Origin: Haliotis rufescens
Lineage: Eukaryota
Direction: 5' to 3'
Length of the DNA: 64,000 nucleotides
Assembly (NCBI RefSeq): GCF_023055435.1
Contig: NW_025963890.1
Location: 65,844,001 to 65,908,000, forward strand
Of the stretch, positions 7,923 through 22,900 are shown piece after piece (position 1 is the first letter of the stretch; each line of letters starts with the position of its first letter). Below the pieces are notes generated by a model, which did not search any database, was not told the origin of the DNA, and worked only from the letters and a program-made list of their open reading frames with translations. Made by a program: the position numbers and the translations under genes.

Positions 7923-10900
7923 CTGGGAAGGGAATGTTAAATGTTAGATCTATCATGTAATATTTATAACAAATATTTCGTTCATTCAAAGCAAGATGCA
8001 CCAAATAAGGTTAAGATATATGGATGAAGAACTTATTATTACAATCAGGAGCTACGTCTCAGTGTAGGTTCTAACACTGTTATCAAGCAAATAAGGATAA
8101 GATATATGGATGAAATAGGGGCGGTCGGGTAGCCTGGTGGTTAAAGGGCTCGCTCGTCACGCCGAAGACCCGGGTTCGATTCCCGACATGGGTACAATGT
8201 GTGAAGCCCATTTGTGGTGTCCCCCGCCTTGATATTGCTGGAATATTGCTAAAAGCGGTGTAAAACCATATTCACTCACTCACTCACTCAGGACAAATAA
8301 ATAAAAAAATATAATGATTACATTATTAAATAGGGGCGGTCGGGTAGCCTGGTGGTTAAAGGGCTCGCTCGTCATGCCGAAAACCCGGGTTCGATTCCCG
8401 ACATGGGTACAATGTGTGAAGCCCATTTGTGGTGTCCCCCGCCCTGATATTGCTGGAATATTGCTAAAAGCGGTGTAAAACCATATTCACTCACTCACTC
8501 ACTCAGGACAAATAAGTGTCAAATAAAAAAAATAAATATAATGATTACATTATTATTAGCAAACTATTGCTACAGTTTTTTTTAAAAACCCAAGAGTCTC
8601 ACCTTATTCCTTCGACCATTGGTGTAGTCGCAGGAAGAATCTGGGCCAGCAACTCATAACAGGGCAGACATATGCCAACAATGAAGCCCACCTAGAAGTA
8701 AAAGGTCATGTACTCAGATTAGATCTGGATATGATGTAAGAGTATGTTAATTCAAAATGTCAGAGCCAGAGAATAATCAGTCTCAATTTTCTGCAGAAAC
8801 AGATTCCATAGGGCATAAAAGGCAAAATATTGATGAAAATTATAAGAATGGGTCACTGAAAGAAATGATGACACCAGGTGTCTAAAAAAGGGTAAATCAT
8901 GTTCTGTCCTAGTGGTAGCACCAGCCACTCACACAAAAGTCGAACAGAATATATTCTCTCAATATTCAAATCTTGGTGCACTAACTAGCAACAAAGTACC
9001 TCTCATCTGTTTGACTAACACATATCAATAGTCCTCAGGTAGTGTTGCACAACCAAAGAATTTCTTATAAAGCATTATATTTCTGACCCTGGTAGACCAT
9101 CCTCCTTCAACAAGAGTTTAAATACCATGTCACAATAAGGCCAAAATATTGCTGACATGGCCATAAATTTGAACTCAATCTCTTCCTGTCACATTAAGGC
9201 CAAAATATTGCTGACATGGCCATAAATTTGAACTCACTCTCCTCCTGACACACTAATGCTGAAATATTGCTGACATGGCCATAAATTTTAACCCACTCTT
9301 CTCCTGTCAAAATATGGCTGACATATTACTGACATGGCCATAAATTTTAACCCACTCTTCTCCTGCTACACAATATGGCTGAAATATTGCTGTCATGGCT
9401 ACAAATTTGAACTCACCTCCAGCTGTGGTAGTTCATGTTTCTTGTCCCGATCCATCATTGCCATGGGGGTCATGCCCTGTTCCTTCTCCTCATCTCCCTA
9501 CAAGGTCAAGGTCAATGTTACTATATTCAAAGACCAGGACACTCTGCCTCACCTGCATAAGTGTTACTAATAATAATTTCTGATAACATTTTAAGATATT
9601 TCATCACTTGAAAAATATGAGGAGTGAATGTAATAACTATTAGTTTCTGTAATAGAATGTACAACACTTTTCTTTATATTAAGTTATCTGAGACACAAAT
9701 AATTAAATGACATTAACCAATACAGAATCTTACAATAACTGTTACTAGAAAGTTTATACTAGTTATTCAAGTGTAAGCATATGTTTTAGGCATTAAATTG
9801 TTCATTTATACAATGAATATCTACCTACATATCCAGCATTTATCCAGGACAACTTGGAAAATGTTCTGTGACAGTATTAACACATAAATATGGTCCTACT
9901 GTAGGAATGATGACAAAGAGGACACCCAGAAGATGAAAGAGAGATAGAGAGAAATTATTAGAAAACATCAAAGAAAGAAATCCAAGAAAATAGAAGGCAA
10001 TAACTGGTCAGAAGTGACCATATTCAAACAAGATACCATATTAAACAATTCCCCTTGACTAAATGACTAGATTGAAGGATGGTGGATCTCTGCTTGCACT
10101 GAAAATTGGATGTGATGATTCATTGAACTATTGATGCATTGCATTGTCTCATTGATGCATTCTCTATGGGCCGATGACAATTTAACTATGACAAGTTGTA
10201 ATATTAATATTAAAGATACCAATAGATGAACAAAATAATTACTTTAATATCATTCATTCTTCTACAAAATACACATTGTTTTAAGAGCCGTGTAGGTATC
10301 TATTCAGAATTCATTCACAACTTTACATTAAATATTTAGCTACTTCTGTAACAACTTCTAGTACATTCTACATGATTGTATGGAATCTACATTGTGCCAA
10401 CTGTTGCAGTACTATCACAGCAATATTTGTAAGTATATTACAAAATATACAATGTCCCCAAAGGTTAGCCATACTGAAAATAATGGATAAATAATGAATA
10501 TATTTTTGGAATTAGAAAAGTGTTTGAATCACATGCAAATGCCGAAGCCTACCCAACCCCATACCGAATGCTCTCAAACTTTCTCATCAGAAACATGCAT
10601 CATGAACCATGTTGACTCGGCCAACCTCTCACAATGCAGTAGAACTTTGAACAGAAACTCCAACTACTCTAGCAACATTAATAACAAAGTTACGAGCCCT
10701 TCCTGTTTAATAGCATTACTTCCACTTCGTGAAAACACATCTCCCATCGCCATTGCAGTACCATGTTGAAACAGAAACTCCCATGAATCTAGCTACCTTA
10801 ATAACAAGTTACAAGCGCTTGTACAGGTCATTGATGAGGATATGACCTTCAAACTGACCTCAAAATTTGAACACAGCCATGAAATATGACAAGTATTGAG

Positions 10901-13900
10901 TTAATTATTGGGAGTCAATGATAAGTCATTGGAAAATGCTTTGATTTCCCATGAATTAATCTGAAACATCATGAAATTTGAACAATGTTCCATAATTTGA
11001 CATATGTGACCTTGACCGTACAGGGGTGACCCAAGACCAAACTAGAGTTTCATCAAATTCCATAACAAAATTAAGGTTATCACCTACATAATCTTTTGAC
11101 TCCTATTTTGTAGGAACATTTGTAACATATTCTCCAAGGGTATTGTTGTTTCTCATGGGAGTACAGGACTGTCCCCAGTAGGCCAAGTTGTCATGTGAGT
11201 GCACCACCTTGCCCATTAGGGGCCATTAGATCTCCTCAGTAAGTCTGTTTCTCATGGGAGCATACGATGTCCTCAGTAAGTCTGTTTCACAAGGGAGCGT
11301 AAGACCTCCTCAGTAAGTCTGTTTCTCATGGATGAGTAAGACCTCCTCAGTAAGTCTGTTTCTCATGGGAGAGTAAGACCTCATTAGTAAGTCTGTTTCT
11401 GAAGGGAGAGTAAGACCTCCTCAGTAAGTCTGTTTCACAAGGGAGCGTAAGACCTCCTCAGTAAGTCTGTTTCCGAAGGAAGTGTAAGACCTTCTCAGTA
11501 AGTCTGTTTCTGAAGGGAGAGTAGGACCTCCTCAGTAAGTCTGTTTCACAAGGGAGCGTAAGACCTCCTCAGTAAGTCTGTTTCACAAGGGAGCGTAAGA
11601 CCTCCTCAGTAAGTCTGTTTCCGAAGGAAGTGTACGACCTTCTCAGTAAGTCTGTTTCTGAAGGGAGAGTAAGACCTCCTCAGTAAGTCTGTTTCACAAG
11701 GGAGCGTAAGACCTCCTCAGTAAGTCTGTTTCTGAAGGAAGTGTAAGACCTCCTCAGTAAGTGTGTTTCTCATGGATGAGTAAGACCTCCTCAGTAAGTC
11801 TGTTTCTCATGGGAGAGTAAGACCTCATTAGTAAGTCTGTTTTCTCATGGGAGCGTAAGACCTCAGTAAGTCTGTTTGTGAAGGGAGAGTAAGAACTCCT
11901 CAGTAAGTCTGTTTCTCAAGGGAGCGTAAGACCTCCACAGTAAGTCTGTTTCACAAGGGAGTGTAAGACCTCCTCAGTAAGTCTGTTTCTGAAGGGAGCG
12001 TAAGACCTCCTCAGTAAGTCTGTTTCTCAAGGGAGAGTAAGACCTCCTCAGTAAGTCTTTTTCTCATGGAAGAGTAAGACCTCCTCAGTAAGTCTGTTTC
12101 TCATGGGAGAGTAAGACCTTATTAGTAAGTCTGTTTCTCATGGGAGCGTAAGACCTCCTCAGTAAGTCTGTTTCTCAAGGGAGAGTAAGACCTCCTCAGT
12201 AAGTCTGTTTCTGAAGGGAGCGTAAGACCTCCTCAGTAAGTCTGTTTCTCAAGGGAGAGTAAGACCTCCTCAGTAAGTCTGTTTCACAAGGGAGCGTAAG
12301 ACCTCCTCAGTAAGTCTGTTTCTCAAGGGAGCGTAAGAACTCCTCAGTAAGTCTGTTTCTCAAGGGAAAGTAAGACCTCCTCAGTAAGTCTGTTTCACAA
12401 GGGAGCGTAAGACCTCCTCAGTAAGTCTGTTTCTCATGGGAGTTCAGGACCCCCCTAGAAAGTTTGTTTATGATGGGAGTGATGTCTGGAATGGAGAGTG
12501 CGAGTCACATGGGCTGTTAGGATGTTAGTGCTGGTTTAGTAGAACTAATATATCGACTAATTCCAGTATAAGGATTCCTACCTGCTGCCAAAACTCTTCC
12601 ATAATGACATAAACGAGGTTAAGCTGCGTGTCCCAGGGCTTATACATGGCACAAAGGTCACATGCGGTCATGGAAACAGTCATTAGCATATGTCTGCAGA
12701 TTGAGAGAGATGTCCACATAATCACACTAGCCACAAAGTAAGCACTAAAATAACAGACTTGTCTCTACATACCTTACTCTGTACTGATTCAGTGACATAC
12801 AACCTTACTCCAAGGCCTTGTTTCCACCAGTAATACAAATCAAAAGGTTTCCAGATAAATTTGCTGGAAAACATAGGCATAATTATACCTACCTAACAGC
12901 AATTTTATCATTTTATTTTTGAAGCATTTTAATCATTTTCATAAAATGTGAAGAGTATGTAGTGACAAGTCTGAGTGTTAACAATAGCATATCTGAAAAA
13001 AAAGTTGAATTAAGGCTTTGCACCATACTTATTCCAATAGAAAAGAGGCATTATAAAACAATCATCAACAGGTAGGTGTACACTGCATTCACCTATCAAC
13101 AGGATATACATTGTACTAATATATGCATAGCAGTTGTGTAGTGTTAATTTTCAGTAATTCCAGAAATATAGAAAGGGTCCTACTCCATAAATGACTTTGA
13201 GGCACTGTGTAGTGAGCGAGTATGGTTTTACATCGCTTTTAGCAATATTCCAGCAATATCATGGCGTGACGAGTGAACGCTTTAACAAGTAGGCTACCCA
13301 ACCGGCCCGAAGCACTGTGTAGAGGAAATGCCACAATATTGCTGTTTTTCCGATATAAGCTGAGCGTTCATTGGTCTGATCAAATCTGCCAATGAACTCG
13401 CTGCTGTATGTATTCATTGGTGATGTCAGAACATAGTGTACACAAACCCTTGAAATAATGATGATTGCATAAATATCTCATTAAGATCATAATTATGTTA
13501 GCAAAGAAATATTTAAAAATCATTGATTCATTTTTCATATTTTTTACAAAATTATTTTCATTGGAATAAATCTGATGTCCCAGACACAGTACAATCCTCC
13601 ATTGCTTACAACTAAGTCAGACAGTTTTATTTCATCTACAGAAGAACTCACAATAACAGGCAAACACAGGTGATGAAAAATAATTGGCAAAACCTCATGA
13701 ATGTCATTGAAGCAAACCCCAGAAAAAGATTGGGATTCATCCAAAGAACATTAAACACTTCTAAAAGTAATGAAGTAAAATAAACACTAATAGGTGGGTC
13801 AAAATATGTTGGAAAGAAAATTTAGAAAATAAAATTAACATTAAATAAACATAAAAATACACGTGTGGATACACGTACTTAAAGAAAAATGGTGTGCATA

Positions 13901-16900
13901 TGCCATCATCAAGTTCATAAATATTTTGAAATGTTGATTTTCAATGTAATTAGAAAAAGTCATAAAAACACTACCCAAAGAAGAAATATATAAATAACTA
14001 GCAAATCCAGAAATGCAGTGATAAAAGAATCAAAACAAAGTGCACAATACAATAAACTAAAGCAAAAACTCATGCACAAATACTCCTTATAACAGTTTTT
14101 ACAGGACTGCCGGTAAGCTATGCTAATGTATCTGCCATGCATACATAGGCCGATTACATTCAGCTGAAACAGGCAAGACAGCCTCACACTCTGTAGAAGT
14201 CACCTGTGCATAAAACTCCTCATAAATGACCTTGACCGTTTCCGCCTGCACGTCCCATGGCTTTGTCATTGCACAAAGGTCACACGATGTCATGGCAATG
14301 TCACGTAACACCCGCCTAGCATGTCAGGGAAAATTGAAAATTATAATTGAACAGATGTCTTTGAATGTCATTAACAACAAGTGACTCTGGAAAACGAATA
14401 CCTTTGTCGTATTAAATTGTTTTTCTTAAATGTGAAATTTATATAACATACTGCTTTCTGATTGAATCATATTCCAGTCAAATGACCATGAAAGTGACAT
14501 TCACAAGCATCTGATTGACCTATTTTGACTTTCATATGCTCATTAAGAGGTACGATTCCTCAAATGAAAGCCACTGGGCTACTGCAACATTCCAGCCGAA
14601 ACTCCAGGGAACTAACTGATGCAATTAACTGCAGAAACACTGTGTATATTGTTAAGAGATTGTATCCTTGACATAAGCGTCTTTGAAAAAGGTGAAGAAG
14701 AAATGATTTATGATCACATATTCTGTAATGAAACTTCTGCACCATGATCTAACCTACAGTGAACGAAATGAGTGAGTAAGTGAGTGAGTTCGGTTTTGAT
14801 GCCGCTTTGAACAGTATTCCAGTTATATCATGGCATATCAGCTAAATGTACAAGGAAAGCCCAAAGTAATGCAGGTCTCAGAGGTTTCCCACTTTGGAGA
14901 AACCCACAATCTTGTTTATGGTGCTGACATACCTAGAAACATAATTGGGGCAAACCAGGAATCGAACCCATAATCATGAGAACAACAGACATCATTGTTT
15001 ATAATTCTAAGAATACTACCTCTATTACATCCTTGCCATAAATCCTGTATTTCGGCTGCAATCACTGAAAACTAATCTTTAGAATTTTCAACAGAACACT
15101 GTCAACCACACATAACTAGTTGTCAAGACAATAGGACCGCCCATCGTCTAGCTCTCTGGCTTGTCAAGGCAGGAAAACCTCACCTCTTTCCCAAAGGCTT
15201 ATCATCGTAGAGACAGAAGATTGGGGAGGAGGGTGGGAGTACTTCTGAACTAATAGAGGTAGTTGCCTTAGAATTATAAACAATGATGTCTATTGTTCAT
15301 ATAATTCTTGCGAATCCTCTTCCTCTATTACAACCAATGAAGTTCAGGAATGGAATAGGTCTTCAGCAACCCATGCTTGCTTGGCGACTAACGGTATCGG
15401 GGGGCCAGGCTCAATGACTTGGTTTGTGCATGTCATCGTATTCCAATTGCGTGGATCGATGCTCATAATATCAATCACTGGATTGTCTGGTCCAGACTCA
15501 ATTATTGAAAGACTGCAATCTTGTAGCTGGAATATTGCTGAGTGCAGCATTAAACAACAAACAACCAAACAACGCTCTATCACATCATTGCCAGAATATA
15601 CCAGAGAGATAGGCGGGTTCTGGCTCTGGTGTGCTCCCAGTGTAGCGGATAGTGGTATAATATTCTTGTGATTTCATCCCCTAATAGTTGTTTCCAATCC
15701 TGAAGGTGAAAAACCAACTATCAAATCACTTCATGTGCAAAACACAAATATGTAGTATCTTCACTAGAACTACCAACTATTTGTTATTATGCAATCATAG
15801 ATGTTCTAAACCTATCTCTCATACATATTATCTTTTCTAATTTTGTGACGTCACTTTCGGTCTATTATACTTCCGGGTGTGACGTCACTTCCAGGTATTG
15901 TTGCTATATGTTGTTATTTCTGGTTCTGACATTCCTTATTTCCCTTCAAATTGTGATGTCAATTCCGGTTTTAAGTGTTCTTTCTGGTTTTGTGACGCCT
16001 TTTCCGGCTAACTCTGGTCCAGGACGTCACTTCCGGTTATGATGACACTTCATTGTGACGCTTCTCCCGAGAGCATAGAATATTGCCTTAATTTCTAGGC
16101 AGTTTATGTTAAGGTTCTTTTCGGAAGTGTTCCAAAGACCTTGAATCCTGATATTGTCCATATTAGGCTCCTGAAAAGAGACATATACCAACAGAGTGGT
16201 CGTATGGGACGAGATGGTACTGTGAGCAACATCTTCAAGGTCTTTGCTTAATGATACTGCAGGGGGGTAAGACATCAAAGATGTAGCATGGATCTGGCCC
16301 TATGTGTACACTAATAATGTCTGGTGATGGTCTCTGACTTCGTTGGATATACCACCAAACCCAGATAAGTTGGCCAGGAAGATCCTGTTGTAACTGTGAC
16401 CTGTCTTGATTCGGTGCCCCCAAACCGTCTAGGTAGACATGAAGATGGACTAGTTGCAGACGAAACCGTGAGTCTGGTGAATATCCAAGGTACTATAGAT
16501 ATCCCGAATGGAAGAACCTGAAATTCATATCTCCTTCCATTGACGGCAAAACATGGAGATATGCTCATGAACCTCACTGTCTGCCTTTCCCAGAGTTGAA
16601 AGCCACTTCTGTATTGATTCCATCTGGAACTGGCGTGGCGGTGCTAGAAAAGACTTGCTCAGGATCTTGCCTGCTATTATCATTCTCATGTCTGGGGAAT
16701 TCTTCTCTGGTGCAAGAAATGTAAAATCATCTGTGATGTAGCAGGGCATAGAGTCATCCCACAGATGACATCACTGCCATGACAGTTTGCTCAAGGGGTT
16801 AACCTCTTTGGTCATGTGGACAAGGTGTCTAGAAAAACCTCAATGACAATGTTTGCAGTTTATAGCTTGGCTCATTCCAGATGGAATCTTTGGCCTTCTG

Positions 16901-19900
16901 GCAGGATTACAAATAGAGGATAGTGGTGGAAGTAAAGCTTGTACCATTTTGATACAACGTTCAGGATCTAGCCATTGGACTTGATCTGCTTCCAGTTCTA
17001 GGTGCATGACAAGAGATGTCCCCCAAGTTGGCGTTATGTTGACAGTCGGCAGTCTTAAATCGTGGTCCATAGTTAATGCCAGGTCGATAGGATGTAGAGA
17101 TTGTTGAAAAGAATCATTCCTGATGGGTCTTGTTGTGTCTGCTGAAATTTCTTCAAAGGATTCCGGTAGCGTGGTGACGTGTCAGATACTGGTCACAAAC
17201 CAAATCATCCAAATCTTTAAACCTAGCTGAAGGTAGGTCAAATCTTGAGTTTGGAGACTCTCATCCAAAACTTGAGAATCTGGTAGAGGTACAGTCATGT
17301 GTCTGATATTGTTTCTTCTTCAGCGACGTAAAGGGGAGATGATAATCGTGTCTCAGCCTCCATAAATTCTCTGACGCAAGGTCAATGATCTTGTGAGCAT
17401 AGCTTGGCCATTGAAGAGAATGATGTACTCTAAGAGGTGAATGGGGTCTGAGATCCAGTATACTCTGGTATTTGAGGGAAGTCAAATTCCTCCAACTTCG
17501 GATGTATCAAAGGTATTAATGATACAGCTGTCCAATCTGCTCCGAGGTAGAGAAATGAGGATCAAAATCTCCCGACAGAGAATAATCAGATCCATCAAAA
17601 TTATCTTCAACTTCCTCTTAGTCTGTGGGGTCAGATAGAATCTTTGGGGGTGACCTGGCGTATGGCGGCCAGATCAATCAAAGGAACCATGTGATTTTCA
17701 CACGTGTCAAGGTCCGAAAGGGACCACAATGATTTAGGCCCGTGGAGAGTGAGTGAGTGAGTGAGTGAGTGAGTGAGTGAGTGAGTGAGTGAGTGAGTGA
17801 GTGAGTGAGTGAGTATGGTTTTACGCCGCTTTTAGCAATATTCCAGCTATATCACAGTGGGGGACACCAGAAATGGGCTTCACAGATTGTACCCATGCCG
17901 GGAATCGAACCCGGGTCTTCGGAATGTGGAGCGAACGCTTTAACCACTAGGCTACCCGACCCGCCCTGTGGAGTGTGAGACTCTAATCCATATGAAACAG
18001 TTCTCAAACAGTCTGCTTGGTTTCATTGTCTTCTCTACAGTCTTTATCCTGGGTGTTCAGGATAGCCAAATCTGAATGCTTCTGAGATGTCCAAGAGGCT
18101 TGGCTTCAGAAGAACCTCTAGGGTAACCGTGTGGTGATCGTGACGATCTGGTAACGGACGATGACTTGGCGCCTGTCGGGTCTGTGCAGGTACCGTACTG
18201 AGACTGTGACGACCAGGTAAGGGCTGGTGGATTGACTCCTGTACTGGAACTGTGCTCTGCAGAGACGGTGTTTGTCTGGTCCATGTGGTAGGTGGATAAT
18301 TGGCTGGTAGATTGGCTTCCCTCGCGACAGTCCTGATTACCGTGCGGTGAACGTGCCAGCTATGTATTCTTGGTGAAATATAGCTGAATGGCATCTAGCT
18401 CTCTGGTCAGTTAGTGACAAGCTGGGCGCTCCCTCAGAAGGTCGTACGGCCATGGTAGTAGACAGGAGATGTTTATCCAGCGGCTGTCCACCTTGCGGCA
18501 TCTTGGCCAGGGACTTCTTGGCTTGATCGCAGGAGCCTTAGGCGTTCCCGATCCTGATCCATCTTGAGTAGCAGTTGAGGGTGAGGAAATAACATCGGCG
18601 ATGGCATCCATATTTAATATTTAATGAAATACCATGACCAATGTTAAGTGACAATAGTGAATGAGTAGAGAAAATTATCAATGACAACAGAACATCTAAT
18701 ATCTGTCTAATAAAAGCTGTGAAAGAAGTATTGGGAAGGCAAAAGTTAACGATCAATATGCATTGTTAAAAAAACAAGAAAAGAAAATGGTCTAATCATC
18801 ACAGTATTTCGTGATTTTATTTCACGTGGCGAGGACAATAGCGATGTCATTTGATTGCGATGTCATGGTAACCAATGATGTCACAAAGGGTTGCAAAGCA
18901 TTGCAATGCAATATCTTTGTAGCGTTATCTCCTACATTATACGCCAATGGAAGCCAGTTTTGCTAATTTCTTTCTTTACCATCACTAAAAAAATATGGAT
19001 TTCCATCAAATTAACTATTTATGAAACAAATTATCCTTCTGGCTTCCATTTGTCCATTGCCATTGCTATAACCTATCATTTGCTCATTGCCCATTGCCAG
19101 TCATTGATAATTTAAGTCCTGGCTTCCAATTGTCCATCGCTATCAACTATTCATTAACTAACTGTCGTGTGTTGGCTTCCATTTGTCCATTGCAAATCTT
19201 CTATCAGCAGCAATGAACTGATGGCTTCCCTTGTTAAGTTCCTCCCTTTGTTATTTCATTACTTTTGTTGTTCTAGCTTACAGGAACATATATATGTCCT
19301 CTGCCTCATAGCATTCATTCACCTGATGAAGGAGCAAGTATACACTCTGAAACGTTGTGTTCCTCATAATAGAGAAGTTAACATCAATAATTTTTCTTCC
19401 TTATGTGTATCACTTCTAAATGCCATTCAAAGACTATTTGTAAAACACTAATGTAAAATCAGCTACTCTTGCAGTAGTTGCCTTACATTGATGATCTTTA
19501 CTCTAGAGTGGACATTTTTATCAGAAAATACATAAAAACATAGCATTAGCACACACAGATTTCATCTAGAGATAGTACATATTTCACAATATTCCACTGT
19601 TAGACTTTGAGGCTAAACAAAACTTTGCTCAAAATAATCTAATGTCAGTGCCAGACATGATCTGAATCAGTCAGTACATACATTACGTAATAAACACATT
19701 TTTTATGTTAAGCAAACAATGGAGAGACTGCACAACAACATATTAAATATCTCAAATAAAGAAGTTAAAAAACAAATTCAAACACAATTCAATGCACATG
19801 AGAATGACCTAAACATGAATATAGAGACAACTAAGAATATCCTTGTGACTCAAACAATCATTACCAGTATATCATTATGTGCATGAGATTATAAGTTAGT

Positions 19901-22900
19901 GAGTGAGTTTGGGTTAACACCGCTTTTAACAGTATTCCAGTTATATCTCGGCGTGTCAGCTTAATGTGGGAGGAAAGCCCAAAGTGATGCAGTTCTCAGA
20001 CGTTTACCACTTCGATGAAACCAACGAGCACGGGTATGGTGCTGACAAACCTAGAAACATAATCGGAGTGAACCGGGATTTGAACCCACAATCATTGGTA
20101 TCTGGCATGCCCAAGGGACGCAACTCTGCACAGCGAATCGCAGCGCCTTAGACGACTGGGCCACCCGTGACCCAATGAGATTAAAAGAAAGAATTATTGA
20201 AAAACATTGAATCATAATCTTTGTCCATGGTTTGCTGTCCAAATCATTGGCTATCACACATGACTGTGTGTGAGTTTACCTGTGTTCCTGTATGTCCCAT
20301 GAAAAGTCATTCCTGTCTGCAATGTCCTTTAACTTGGCTCTGTTCCCAAAGAACAGTGCCAGGTCTGTAGCCAGAATGCAGTGCCGGATGTCACCCAGAA
20401 CCTGCAATGACAGTAGCTATATACAGGAACAATGGCTGCTATCTGGATTCAAGGAGTGTTGATTATGCCTACCTCAAGTATCAATACATACATTCTAAAT
20501 TCTCCATGTTCAACATGGCCCAGTTAAATTTCTAAATCCACCATGTGCAACGCAGCCCAGCTCAATTACTAAATTCTCCATGTTTCATGTTGTCCCGCTA
20601 AATTACAAAATCCTCCATGCTCAACCCATCCTAGCTCAATTACAAAATCCTCCATGTTCAACTCAGCCCAACTAAATTACTAAATTCTCCATATTCCACG
20701 CGGCCCAGCTCAATTACAAAATCCTCCATGTTCCACGTGACAAAGCTACCTTACTAAATTCTTTATGTTCCATACAGCCCAGCGGAATTATTAAAATCTA
20801 CTTTCTTGTAAGATATAGAGTCTATTCCCCATCTGTAGTGCATAGATATACATGTAACTTCTCAGAGACCACCTTACCTTTTTGTATTCTTCTGAACACA
20901 GGTGCTTGAAGATATTGTGACCTTCATGCTGCAACAATCAAATTCCAGTATTACAATCACATGCAAACTGACACCACTGAAACATTACCATACAGGCTGA
21001 TATATATGTATCTGGTCTACAACATAACATAAGATATTACTGTGTTTTATCTATATATTTGATCTGTACCTCAGAGCCAGGTCTACATCATAAGTTGTCC
21101 ACCGGTCTCGAGGGGTATATGGTGTGATGTATGAATGAATGTTGGTAATCCCGACAAGCGATCCCTCAGGGAATAATATGAGTTGTCGCAGGATCATGAG
21201 GGGTACATGGGGTTTTATGCATCCTGGATTAGATTTTATACCATGAACCAAAGAGTGGTATAAAATCTAATGAGGGACGCATAAAACACAGTGATCCCCT
21301 TGTGATCCTGCTACAACAAATTCATCTTACCAACATGCTTTAATGTGACATTGTTATAGAATTAACACACATTCAAAATTGATAGAAAACAGCGATTTGA
21401 TTGAGCTGAGGTTAACTTGTGCAATGTCATGTGACTTATGCGTGATAAGCAAGTTACCTAGATGTTTCCGTATATATTTCCCGGGCTACAAGGAAAATTA
21501 TTTCCCTCTCCATAACCAATCAAAACCTGTGTGCGAAATATGCATGTCGGAAAGCACACGTAAAACCTCCAATCATCTCTCTCTCTCAACAAATGTTATA
21601 TTGTGGATAACATCTTGTTAGTAAAGTACAGATTCTAGTACTTTTTTGGGTTGAGTCCCATCCGGGATTCGAACCCACACTGCCAGAGTGATGCACCTAA
21701 TCGACAGCACACAAAGTCAGCAATCTAACCCACTCAGCCACACTAAGATAATGAAGCCTGCACCATGTGACCCACGACATGCTACTGTGGGGCCCAGCAT
21801 GCTACCTGCAGTATCGCGACTGTCTGGTTGAAGTGATGATGTTCCATGGTGGAGGTGGAGTAGATGGCTGCCAAGGGGGAGGCACTCTTCACCATGAAGG
21901 CGTTGGTCTTCCCGCGATGATCCAAGTCATGACACAGGCATGCCACAAACAGTGCCAGGCTCTGAAACAGATGAACAACATTGGAATTCAACTTCCATGT
22001 GATCTGACGAGGACATTAGTTGACACCGGAGTAAAACAAATGTACCACGAATTACCCCATTTAGATGTTTCAGAATACTTGTGCCTTCACTGATATTAAT
22101 ACATGAAACTGGGGACATTTGGCACACCATGGCACAGTGTGATCACCAAAAGTCATACTGAGGTTAGCTCACTGGTGTCCTGCCCTACTAGCATTACAGT
22201 TATTATACACAGCCTATTAGGGGAATATGTAACTGACTGACCTCAGTTGTTTGATAGGCATTTCTTAGAAGTTGATGGAGGGCAAAGTAGACACAATTTA
22301 TTGTCAAGTGATCCCTCGGGGAATATTATATGTTATTGCAGGATCATGAGGGGTACATGGGGTTTTATGCATCCTGGATTAGGTTTTATACCATGATCCG
22401 GAGAGTGGTATAAAATCTAACGAGGGACGCATAAAACCCAGTAATCCCCTTGTGATCCTGCTACAACAAATTTATCTTACCAACATACTTTAATGTGACA
22501 TTGTTATAGAATTAACACACATTCAAAATTGATAGAAAACAGCGGTTCGATTGAGCTGAGGTTATCTTGTGCAATGTCACGTGACTTATGCGTGATAAGT
22601 TACCTAGATGTTTCCATATTGATCCGTATGGATAACAACTTCTTTATTTTACTGCAAAGGCAACGTTTCGGTATAGACCCTTATAAGTTGTCAAAAAGGA
22701 GTAAACAAGAGTCATGACTGACCTCAAGTGGAGTAAACAGTAGTCATGACAGACCTCAAGTGGAGTAAACAGGAGTCATGACTGACCTCAAGTGGAGTAA
22801 ACAGGTGCCATGACTGACTCAAGTGGAGTTAACAGGAGCCATGACTGACCTCAAGTGGAGTAAACAGGAGACATGACTGACCTCAAGTGGAGTAAACAGG

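What the first reader, a model, noticed from the sequence alone, without database searches (positions are those of the whole stretch)
12582..14315. Swappable active-site exon: Tyr (PDE10-type) versus Met (PDE4-type) in the nucleotide pocket
Seen: E18a reads [30 protein letters not shown] and E18b reads [30 protein letters not shown]. Both keep the metal-binding Asp of CDL, KPW and EF. Including both gives a frameshift and a TGA within E18b, so NMD could enforce exclusivity. Known: this segment lines the purine pocket. The Tyr of human PDE10A IYAEF (Y693 in PDE10A2) bonds the invariant Gln and shapes the inhibitor selectivity pocket, whereas PDE4 has IMEEF. Inference: the splice choice may change cAMP/cGMP preference, Km or inhibitor sensitivity.
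Basis: partly seen in the sequence, partly recalled or inferred. Interest (0 to 1): 0.85.

Follow-up and report, generated by a model that had tools for sequence, protein, structure and literature searches.

The report
Swappable catalytic exon pair, abalone PDE10
An abalone cyclic-nucleotide phosphodiesterase gene carries two interchangeable copies of one active-site exon; public gene models already show this splice choice, and it is shared by molluscs and ribbon worms, so it is real and very old, but what it does to the enzyme is untested.

Summary
On the minus strand, two 112-nt exons (E18a 14204-14315, E18b 12582-12693) have AG/GT splice sites, the same phase and 58% peptide identity. Both match the same stretch of the Pfam phosphodiesterase profile. 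Including both, or skipping both, gives an early TGA.

The gene is the abalone (Haliotis) PDE10-family gene, named "pde-5" in RefSeq. The H. rufescens isoforms already hold exactly one of the two exons each: E18a in X3, X7 and X11, E18b in eight others. Their peptides are identical to the window's.

The same a/b pair appears as alternative isoforms in limpets, mussels, scallops, oysters, clams and two nemerteans. All b-type exons, from five spiralian phyla, form one clade. So this is an ancient mutually exclusive exon pair, and b, not a, is the commoner annotated form.

The functional reading is partly supported. The residue 19 positions after the metal-binding Asp corresponds to PDE10A Y693 and PDE4D M337, in the Q2 pocket. 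It is Met in 63 of 63 b-type sequences, but mostly Phe in a-type ones; Tyr is a gastropod, cnidarian and vertebrate state. E18b is not PDE4-like overall. The residue that is an invariant Gln in other PDEs is Glu in molluscs.

No reads could be examined and no kinetics exist. I found no paper that describes the pair.

The parts
20280..20401 (-). E17, the constitutive upstream exon (122 nt). It ends ...WDIQEH plus two spare bases (AG), followed by a GT donor at 20279-20278.
   Evidence: Sequence, translation, Pfam PDEase_I positions 103-139, tblastn of RefSeq isoform P0107.
14204..14315 (-). E18a, the a-type alternative exon (112 nt). It encodes the end of helix 14, the metal-binding Asp, and helix 15 with Tyr at +19 (residue 761 of isoform X3).
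   Evidence: Pfam 31.1 bits at positions 148-183. Peptide identical to H. rufescens isoforms X3, X7 and X11.
12694..14203 (-). Intron of 1510 nt between the two alternative exons. It is far too long for steric exclusion of the two splice events.
   Evidence: The inverted-repeat scan found only chance-level pairings.
12582..12693 (-). E18b, the b-type alternative exon (112 nt). It has the same phase, with Met at +19, Tyr at +5 and +16, and Trp at +23.
   Evidence: Pfam 28.6 bits at positions 148-183. Peptide identical to H. rufescens X1, X2, X4-X6 and X8-X10, to H. cracherodii X1 and X2, and to H. asinina X1 and X2.
9417..9497 (-). E19, the constitutive downstream exon (81 nt, phase 0). It starts with GDEEK, and its last codon (9417-9419, GAG) puts Glu where other PDEs have the invariant Gln.
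   Evidence: The out-of-frame reading stops after 8 codons. No second E19 copy was found in the window.
8602..8691 (-). E20, which starts with VGF immediately after the Glu.
   Evidence: tblastn and translation.

Best explanation
E18a and E18b are an anciently duplicated pair of mutually exclusive exons in the catalytic domain of the abalone PDE10-family gene (RefSeq name 'pde-5').

Shown here:
- Each mRNA model carries exactly one of the two.
- Either exon supplies the C-terminal half of helix 14, the metal-binding Asp (D742) and about two thirds of helix 15. This stretch includes six pocket-lining positions.
- In abalone the two versions differ at only one of those six, +19 (Y761 or M761). 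This is the Q2-pocket site that is Y693 in PDE10A and M337 in PDE4D.
- They also differ at a set of positions that co-vary between types across phyla: -8, +5, +14 and +16 (and +23, which was one of my two sorting criteria).
- Both exons are 112 nt long, which is not a multiple of three. Including both or neither therefore gives an early stop.

Inferred:
- Nonsense-mediated decay removes the double-inclusion and double-skip products, and splicing regulators choose which exon is used.
- The two products are enzymes with the same fold but a repacked Q2 sub-pocket next to the purine-reading residue, which is Glu794 here rather than Gln. Their Km, kcat, nucleotide preference or small-ligand sensitivity would then differ moderately.

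The b form is the main one and the a form the minor one, judging by annotated isoform counts.
For: Anatomy, phase and stop codons.

Both exons are PDEase_I at the same profile positions.

The gene is PDE10-like. Its core exon matches PDE10A at 73 bits, against 61 for PDE2A and 54 for PDE5. The modelled catalytic domain matches PDE10A2 crystal structures at TM 0.90-0.92 and 45-46% identity.

Among the 11 H. rufescens RefSeq isoforms, 3 have a and 8 have b, never both or neither, and a is combined with either E9 version.

The same a/b alternation occurs within one gene in Mytilus edulis, Pecten, Argopecten, Saccostrea, Crassostrea virginica, Mya, Mercenaria, Patella caerulea, Lineus and Tubulanus. 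A Bulinus gene model carries a followed by b in tandem.

The b-type exons of 21 taxa in Mollusca, Annelida, Nemertea, Platyhelminthes and Rotifera form one clade (UFBoot 95, SH-aLRT 83, recovered in 98% of bootstrap trees).

Type-specific residues are conserved. In b-type, +19 is Met in 63/63, +5 is Tyr or Phe in 61/63 and +4 is Met in 62/63. In a-type, +19 is Phe 37, Tyr 5, Ile 2, +14 is Thr in 41/46 and +16 is Lys in 36/46.

E18b is 100% identical between H. rufescens and H. asinina, while most other exon matches are 71-97% identical.

AlphaFold models of X3 and X1 give identical helices (727-742, 744-747, 750-773), with pLDDT 90-96 over the swapped part.

Pocket roles of the +1, +3, +4, +18, +19 and +22 positions come from PMC8979230, PMC12982385 and PMC11820465.
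Against: Expression of both exons therefore rests on RefSeq and other gene models, whose transcript support I could not inspect.

Only b isoforms are listed for H. asinina and H. cracherodii.

In abalone only one direct pocket residue differs between the two exons.

PDE9 work argues that removing the partner residue of the Gln changes kinetics only 2-8 fold, and it argues against a glutamine switch (PMC3069055).

The models come without coordinates, so side-chain contacts (for example +5 with +19) are guessed from covariation and helix periodicity.

The exon tree rests on 38 columns, which include the type-defining ones.
Confidence: 0.8

Rival explanations
1. The swap acts mainly outside the nucleotide pocket. 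The many differences on the non-pocket faces (a has charged R, R, D, E and K at -11, -8, -7, +13 and +16; b has H, M, T, N and Y there) would repack helices 14 and 15, or change a surface used for GAF-catalytic coupling, dimer contacts, a partner protein or stability. Substrate preference would be essentially the same in both forms.
For: In abalone, five of the six pocket positions coded by the exon are identical in a and b, while 15 or more other positions differ. Positions -8, +14 and +16 co-vary with exon type across phyla. In PDE9, removing the partner residue of the Gln had modest kinetic effects (PMC3069055).
Against: The most strictly conserved b-type marker is the pocket residue itself (Met at +19, 63/63). 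Met at +4 is also fixed (62/63), and +4 is the position of the Gln partner Glu406 in PDE9 (PMC3069055). No interaction surface has been mapped here.
Confidence: 0.3
2. The splice choice switches nucleotide specificity, cAMP versus cGMP, because Tyr761 holds the purine-reading residue in one orientation and Met761 releases it.
For: Position +19 is the Y693-equivalent site (PMC12982385). It lies next to Glu794, and both residue states have been conserved for hundreds of millions of years.
Against: The partner residue is Glu, not Gln, so there is no amide to flip. Both exons keep Gln at +11, which from my own knowledge is the PDE5 Gln775-type lock. Most a-type exons have Phe at +19, which cannot hydrogen-bond. 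The glutamine-switch model is itself disputed (PMC3069055, PMC12982385).
Confidence: 0.2
3. E18a is a decaying or noise-spliced duplicate. Only the b enzyme matters, and the a isoforms are annotation by-products.
For: The b form dominates isoform lists. The two other Haliotis species have only b models. My searches found no short transcript-derived fragment with E18a.
Against: E18a has an intact frame and intact splice sites. A-type exons keep the metal-binding Asp, KPW, Gln at +11, Ile at +18 and EEF in every mollusc and nemertean examined. They are modelled independently in more than 10 species. The a form is in the majority of listed Mya isoforms. A blank proves nothing, because that search only sees proteins of 36-115 aa.
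Confidence: 0.06

Closest known systems
Human PDE10A (catalytic domain, PDE10A2 numbering)
   Same: It is the best solved relative by sequence and by fold (TM 0.90-0.92, 45-46% identity). It has the same tandem GAF plus catalytic architecture (Pfam domains, models). E18a reproduces the I-Y-x-E-F motif containing the Y693 equivalent, and the metal-binding Asp corresponds to D674.
   Different: To my knowledge vertebrate PDE10A has a single version of this exon, and its isoforms differ at the N-terminus. The abalone enzyme has Leu-Glu where PDE10A has Gly725-Gln726, and Gln at +11 where PDE10A has Thr685. Its main isoform has Met, not Tyr, at the Y693 site.
[quoted passage not shown]
   Same: The exons are adjacent and homologous, with equal length and phase. 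One is used per transcript. The pair is ancient, both copies are conserved, and the swap replaces a homologous structural segment to tune function.
   Different: The pair sits in the active-site helix of a cyclic-nucleotide phosphodiesterase and is restricted to spiralian animals. I found no description of such a pair in any PDE.
PDE4 Q2 pocket (PDE4D Ile336, Met337, Phe340)
   Same: E18b has the same local I-M-E-E-F motif. Met therefore occupies the Q2-pocket position next to the Ile of the hydrophobic clamp (PMC11820465).
   Different: The rest of E18b is of the GAF-PDE type (MTACDL...KPW). PDE6 and PDE5 are its best solved matches, and no PDE4 chain appears among the 60 listed.
PDE9A Q453E and E406A mutants (PMC3069055)
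   Same: These are the only experimental model I found of a Glu at the invariant-Gln position and of removing that residue's partner. Q453E lowered kcat/Km about 50-fold for cGMP and about 5-fold for cAMP. E406A changed kinetics 2-8 fold.
   Different: They are engineered mutants of a cGMP-specific human enzyme. In molluscs the Glu is the natural, conserved state, and the partner position toggles by splicing.

Membership tests
Class I cyclic-nucleotide phosphodiesterase catalytic domain (Pfam PF00233) | Sequence match to the PDEase_I profile above the gathering score | tested here: met
   E18a scores 31.1 bits and E18b 28.6 bits (cutoff 24.8), both at profile positions 148-183. The core exon at 21785-22015 scores 75.6 bits.
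Class I cyclic-nucleotide phosphodiesterase catalytic domain (Pfam PF00233) | Metal-binding His and Asp residues, including the Asp in the swapped exon | tested here: met
   The HDLDHRG motif lies in the exon at 21785-22015. The Asp of CDL is present in both E18a and E18b and is invariant (D742) in 61 aligned homologues.
Class I cyclic-nucleotide phosphodiesterase catalytic domain (Pfam PF00233) | Invariant purine-binding glutamine before the G-F motif | tested here: not met
   The codon at 9417-9419 is GAG, giving Glu. The same L-E-V-G-F motif occurs in all mollusc sequences of the first homologue set except the Crassostrea representative (whose E19 version has Gln), and in Lingula and Lamellibrachia. 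Other phyla have Gln.
PDE10 family | Catalytic domain closest to PDE10A among solved PDEs | tested here: met
   By sequence: 73 bits for PDE10A, 61 for PDE2A and 54 for PDE5. By fold: among catalytic-domain-only entries, PDE10A2 at TM 0.90-0.92. For the swapped exon alone the picture is mixed: E18a scores about equally against PDE6, PDE10A and PDE5, and E18b scores PDE6 above PDE5 above PDE10A.
PDE10 family | Two N-terminal GAF domains followed by the catalytic domain | tested here: met
   Precomputed Pfam GAF families plus PF00233 on the RefSeq isoforms. Both models show two alpha/beta GAF-like domains followed by an all-helical domain. Full-length matches to PDE2A and PDE6.
PDE10 family | Selectivity (Q2) pocket with the Tyr693 equivalent and the Gly725-Gln726 equivalents | tested here: not met
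   Tyr is present only in the E18a isoforms; E18b has Met. The Gly-Gln positions read Leu-Glu in both isoforms. The role of Gly725 is from my own knowledge and was not checked in a paper.
Mutually exclusive tandem-duplicated exons | Adjacent homologous exons of equal length and phase with canonical splice sites | tested here: met
   Both exons are 112 nt with AG...GT sites, share 58% amino-acid identity, and are each other's closest relatives in the genome.
Mutually exclusive tandem-duplicated exons | Transcripts carry exactly one of the two | tested here: inconclusive
   This holds at the level of gene models: all listed isoforms, 11 of H. rufescens and those of more than 10 other species, have exactly one. 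Frame arithmetic makes the other combinations nonsense transcripts.
Mutually exclusive tandem-duplicated exons | Both copies conserved in other lineages | tested here: met
   The a and b types alternate in gastropods, bivalves and nemerteans. The b type forms a single clade.
   No PDE4 chain appears among the 60 best solved matches listed (74 in all at E up to 1). Only the I-M-E-E-F motif is shared (PMC11820465).

The most novel reading that the evidence does not exclude
One gene would encode enzymes with different cyclic-nucleotide handling. In this reading an exon switch more than 500 million years old, specific to spiralians, re-tunes the Q2 pocket next to a naturally Glu-substituted 'invariant glutamine'. 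The a and b isoforms would then differ substantially in cAMP/cGMP selectivity or affinity. In oysters a second alternative exon pair (E19) would toggle that Gln/Glu residue itself. If so, alternative splicing, not only gene duplication, diversified PDE catalytic specificity in a whole animal clade.
Probability: 0.2. Interest if true: 0.75.

Novelty: new member of a known kind. Interest (0 to 1): 0.5.

Why it matters
From my own knowledge, the usual account of PDE isoforms is that splicing and alternative promoters vary the regulatory N-termini and leave the catalytic domain constant. Here a conserved exon swap sits inside the catalytic pocket of a PDE10-family enzyme across molluscs and nemerteans, and the b-type exon occurs in five spiralian phyla.

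It offers a natural pair of enzymes for asking what the Y693/M337 position and its co-varying neighbours contribute to substrate and ligand selectivity, in a background where the invariant Gln is Glu.

Two practical points follow. The isoforms are already in RefSeq, so the existence of the pair is not new. And PDE10A-directed inhibitors that rely on Tyr693, Gly725 and Gln726 should not be assumed to act on the molluscan enzymes.

Tried and rejected
- **Neighbouring DNA in other species.** I could not fetch the genomic neighbourhood of the exons in other species. Tandem arrangement elsewhere rests on isoform sets and on one Bulinus model that carries a followed by b.
- **Spliced model.** Searches went exon by exon by reference, and full-length work used database proteins (P0107, P0215).
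- **Short transcript fragments.** A search with the 66-aa open frame around E18a was blank. This is uninformative, because only proteins of 36-115 aa are seen.
- **Region search.** A search restricted to the E18a part of P0107 found only itself and the Patella protein.
- **Exclusion by RNA pairing.** The inverted-repeat scan of 12400-15000 gave only chance-level pairs. Examples are 13145-13167 with 14321-14343 (74% complementary) and 12603-12620 with 13691-13708 (83%). No comparative DNA was available to test them.
- **Steric exclusion.** Rejected, because the intron between the exons is 1510 nt.
- **Origin of E18b from a paralogue.** Rejected, because E18a is its closest relative in the genome.
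- **"PDE4-type exon".** Rejected as a family resemblance.
- **Second E19 carrying Gln.** None found in the window.
- **Structure models.** They confirm the fold and the helices, but no coordinates are returned, so I could not measure contacts between +5, +16, +19 and Glu794.
- **Tyr693-Gln726 hydrogen bond.** The PNAS PDE10A structure paper is not held, and the papers I could read do not state the bond.
- **Literature.** Searches for a described PDE10/pde-5 mutually exclusive exon found nothing.


Full report
**What is in the sequence**

The gene lies on the minus strand. Two exons of exactly 112 nt sit 1510 nt apart. E18a is at 14204-14315, preceded by AG at 14317-14316 and followed by GT at 14203-14202. 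E18b is at 12582-12693, with AG at 12695-12694 and GT at 12581-12580.

Each exon begins with one base that completes the last codon of E17 and then runs for 37 codons. Nucleotide identity is 69/112.

E17 is 20280-20401 and ends with two spare bases before a GT. E19 is 9417-9497, phase 0, and begins GDEEK. E20 starts at 8691 with VGF.

The frame claims hold:
- Read directly after E18a, E18b hits TGA at its 12th codon.
- If both exons are skipped, E19 is read one base out of frame and stops after 8 codons.

Exactly one of the two exons must therefore be included for the frame to hold.

**Not a chance resemblance**

Each peptide alone passes the Pfam gathering score for PDEase_I, and both hit the same profile positions, 148-183. 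In the whole 1.33-Gb assembly, E18a is the best relative of E18b at 58% identity. Exons of paralogous PDE genes reach only 39-52%. E18b is thus a local tandem duplicate, not an import from another PDE gene.

**What gene and organism**

The core catalytic exon (21785-22015) matches solved PDE10A best: 73 bits, against 61 for PDE2A and 54 for PDE5.

A search of 1.84 billion representative proteins with E18b, followed by a homologue search, led to RefSeq proteins named "probable 3',5'-cyclic phosphodiesterase pde-5". The window's exons are about 100% identical to Haliotis rufescens isoform X3 (P0107, XP_048256360.1). The window is therefore abalone, either H. rufescens or a very close relative.

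All full-length work used database proteins.

**The pair is already in public gene models**

Of the 11 H. rufescens isoforms, X3, X7 and X11 contain a peptide identical to E18a. X1, X2, X4-X6 and X8-X10 contain one identical to E18b. None has both or neither.

E18a is combined with either E9 version, so the choices look combinatorial.

The listed isoforms of H. cracherodii and H. asinina are b only. The E18b peptide of H. asinina is 100% identical to the window's, while most other exon matches are 71-97% identical.

**How old the pair is**

The same a/b alternation within one gene appears in:
- Patella caerulea
- Mytilus edulis
- Pecten maximus and Argopecten irradians
- Saccostrea echinata and Crassostrea virginica
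- Mya arenaria and Mercenaria mercenaria
- the nemerteans Lineus longissimus and Tubulanus polymorphus

One Bulinus gene model contains a followed by b in tandem.

B-type exons also occur in annelids, flatworms and rotifers. A-type exons occur in cnidarians, Trichoplax, deuterostomes, arthropods, a bryozoan, a brachiopod and the annelid Owenia.

In a maximum-likelihood tree of 54 exon peptides, the 21 b-type exons from five phyla form one clade (UFBoot 95, SH-aLRT 83, recovered in 98% of bootstrap trees). The a-type exons of the same species lie outside it. The caveat is that the tree rests on only 38 columns, and these include the type-defining ones.

The simplest reading is a single exon duplication early in Spiralia. 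The a type keeps the ancestral metazoan state and the b type is the derived copy. B is the commoner annotated form in most species, although a predominates among the listed Mya isoforms.

**What differs between the two exons**

I number positions from the metal-binding Asp, which is D742 in the abalone isoforms and D674 in PDE10A (PDB entries of the D674A mutant appear). The exon supplies pocket positions +1, +3, +4, +18, +19 and +22. These correspond to PDE10A L675, S677, V678, I692, Y693 and F696 (PMC8979230, PMC12982385).

In abalone, five of these six are identical in a and b. Only +19 differs: Tyr in a, Met in b.

Position +19 lines the Q2 or selectivity pocket in both reference enzymes. 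In PDE10A, Y693 donates the hydrogen bond used by selective inhibitors (PMC12982385). In PDE4D, the neighbouring Ile336 forms the hydrophobic clamp and Met337, Phe340, Met357 and Phe372 line Q2 (PMC11820465).

Across the unique sequences I sorted into the two types, 63 b-type and 46 a-type (sorted by +19 and +23; 9 others fitted neither):

| Position | a type (46) | b type (63) |
|---|---|---|
| +4 | mostly Ser (34) | Met (62) |
| +5 | small residues | Tyr or Phe (61) |
| +14 | Thr (41) | Leu, Val or Ile |
| +16 | Lys (36) | varied (Tyr, Ser, Asn and others) |
| +19 | Phe 37, Tyr 5, Ile 2 | Met (63) |
| +23 | Tyr (sorting criterion) | Trp (sorting criterion) |

Because I defined the two classes by +19 and +23, these two rows are partly circular.

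"Tyr versus Met" therefore describes gastropods only. The general contrast is an aromatic residue versus Met at +19, coupled with a small residue versus an aromatic one at +5. That looks like a volume-compensating pair. This last point is my inference from covariation, and I could not measure any contact.

E18b is not PDE4-like as a whole. Its best solved matches are PDE6 (30 bits) and PDE5 (23 bits), then PDE10A (18 bits).

The residue that the Tyr is supposed to hold is not Gln here. The last codon of E19 is GAG (9417-9419), giving L-E-V-G-F. The same Glu is present in all mollusc sequences of the first homologue set except the Crassostrea representative (whose E19 version has Gln), and in Lingula and Lamellibrachia. 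Other phyla have Gln. It is thus a real, conserved substitution shared by both isoforms.

The PDE10A Gly725 position is Leu. Both exons keep Gln at +11, which from my own knowledge is the position of the Gln775 lock in PDE5.

The only experimental guide I found is PDE9 (PMC3069055):
- Q453E lowered kcat/Km about 50-fold for cGMP and about 5-fold for cAMP.
- Removing the Gln partner (E406A, at position +4) changed kinetics only 2-8 fold.
- The authors argue against a glutamine switch.

This makes a moderate tuning of affinity or ligand fit more likely than a clean switch of nucleotide specificity.

**Fold compatibility**

I ran AlphaFold models of the a isoform (X3) and the b isoform (X1), each with a 61-sequence alignment. 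Both give the same helices (727-742, 744-747, 750-773) and pLDDT of 90-96 over the swapped segment. The b model's catalytic domain superposes on PDE10A2 crystal structures at TM 0.90-0.92.

Both exon versions are therefore compatible with the canonical fold. No coordinates are returned, so I could not examine side-chain geometry.

**How exclusivity is probably enforced**

The frame rule is shown. I infer that nonsense-mediated decay clears the double-inclusion and double-skip products.

The 1510-nt intron rules out steric exclusion, and both exons use GT-AG introns. An inverted-repeat scan gave only chance-level candidates for competing RNA pairings, and I had no comparative DNA to test them.

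Both exons have moderate splice sites, as is usual for alternative exons. E18a has TAG|G at the acceptor and CAG|GTGACT at the donor. E18b has CAG|A and CAG|GTAGGA.

**What I could not do**

- Two protein searches aimed at transcript fragments with E18a were blank or nearly so.
- Three literature searches found no description of this exon pair.

**Verdict**

This is a genuine, ancient, spiralian-wide pair of mutually exclusive exons inside the catalytic pocket of a PDE10-family enzyme. It is already present in RefSeq isoforms, but as far as I could find it has not been described or tested.

It is a new member of a known kind of system (substitution between tandem-duplicated exons). I score interest at 0.5. 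An alternative active-site exon in a PDE is unusual, and it gives a clean natural experiment. But the pair is annotated, only one direct pocket residue changes in abalone, and the biochemical effect is unknown.

Noticed in passing
window 9417-9419 (minus strand), and proteins: The invariant purine-binding Gln of PDEs is Glu (GAG) in abalone, in both isoforms. The same L-E-V-G-F motif occurs in nearly all mollusc sequences seen (one of the two Crassostrea E19 versions has Gln instead), and in Lingula and Lamellibrachia. In Crassostrea virginica and Magallana gigas, the exon carrying this residue (E19) exists in two quite different versions among the isoforms. One ends ...ESQ (Gln) and the other ...HLE (Glu), so oysters may toggle this residue by splicing. 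Lineus also has two E19 versions, both with Gln. No second E19 was found in this window.
   Followed up: partly
window 11228-12442: A 37-bp minisatellite of 33 copies (89% matches) lies in the intron downstream of E18b, starting about 140 nt after the E18b donor. In the gene's sense strand each unit carries a CUCUCCCUU-like pyrimidine run and a GAGGAGG purine run. It could be an array of splicing-factor sites affecting the a/b choice, or simply a repeat.
   Followed up: no
window 9128-9420: A 59-bp repeat of 4.9 copies begins at the E19 donor, so degenerate copies of the donor-like sequence (GAGTGAGTTCAAATTT) recur downstream of the real 5' splice site.
   Followed up: no
G000 contig C179, about 2672300-2674650 (L005, L007): A paralogous PDE10-like gene has a single a-like version of this exon (…HIYEEFYVQ). 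Its E19-like exon lies only about 380 nt downstream and carries a normal Gln (KQQ then VGF). It has no duplicated exon.
   Followed up: partly
G000 contig C598, about 330410-333517 (L004): An uninterrupted open frame of about 919 aa encodes a GAF-PDE of the PDE5/6/11 type, with no introns over at least 620 residues. It could be a retrogene, an unusual intronless gene or a foreign contig.
   Followed up: no
So do an optional 6-residue segment (SSVSDP) and three N-termini. The gene has at least three mutually exclusive clusters, used in several combinations.
   Followed up: partly
proteins P0149-P0156, P0161, P0167: Echinoderms and hemichordates also show two versions of the homologous exon across closely related species: a KPW...TVKVIFDEFY type and a KPF/KPY...IFEEF type. 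This suggests a separate alternative exon pair in Ambulacraria. These exons do not group with the spiralian b type in the tree.
   Followed up: partly
protein P0001: A 105-aa open frame from an unnamed contig contains two b-like copies of the exon about 35 codons apart. They match the two rotifer versions (IIMEEFF and ILMDEFW). Rotifers seem to have duplicated the b-type exon again.
   Followed up: no
window about 16000-18400 (minus strand): Long open frames resembling retroelement proteins lie in the 6-kb intron between E17 and E18a.
   Followed up: no
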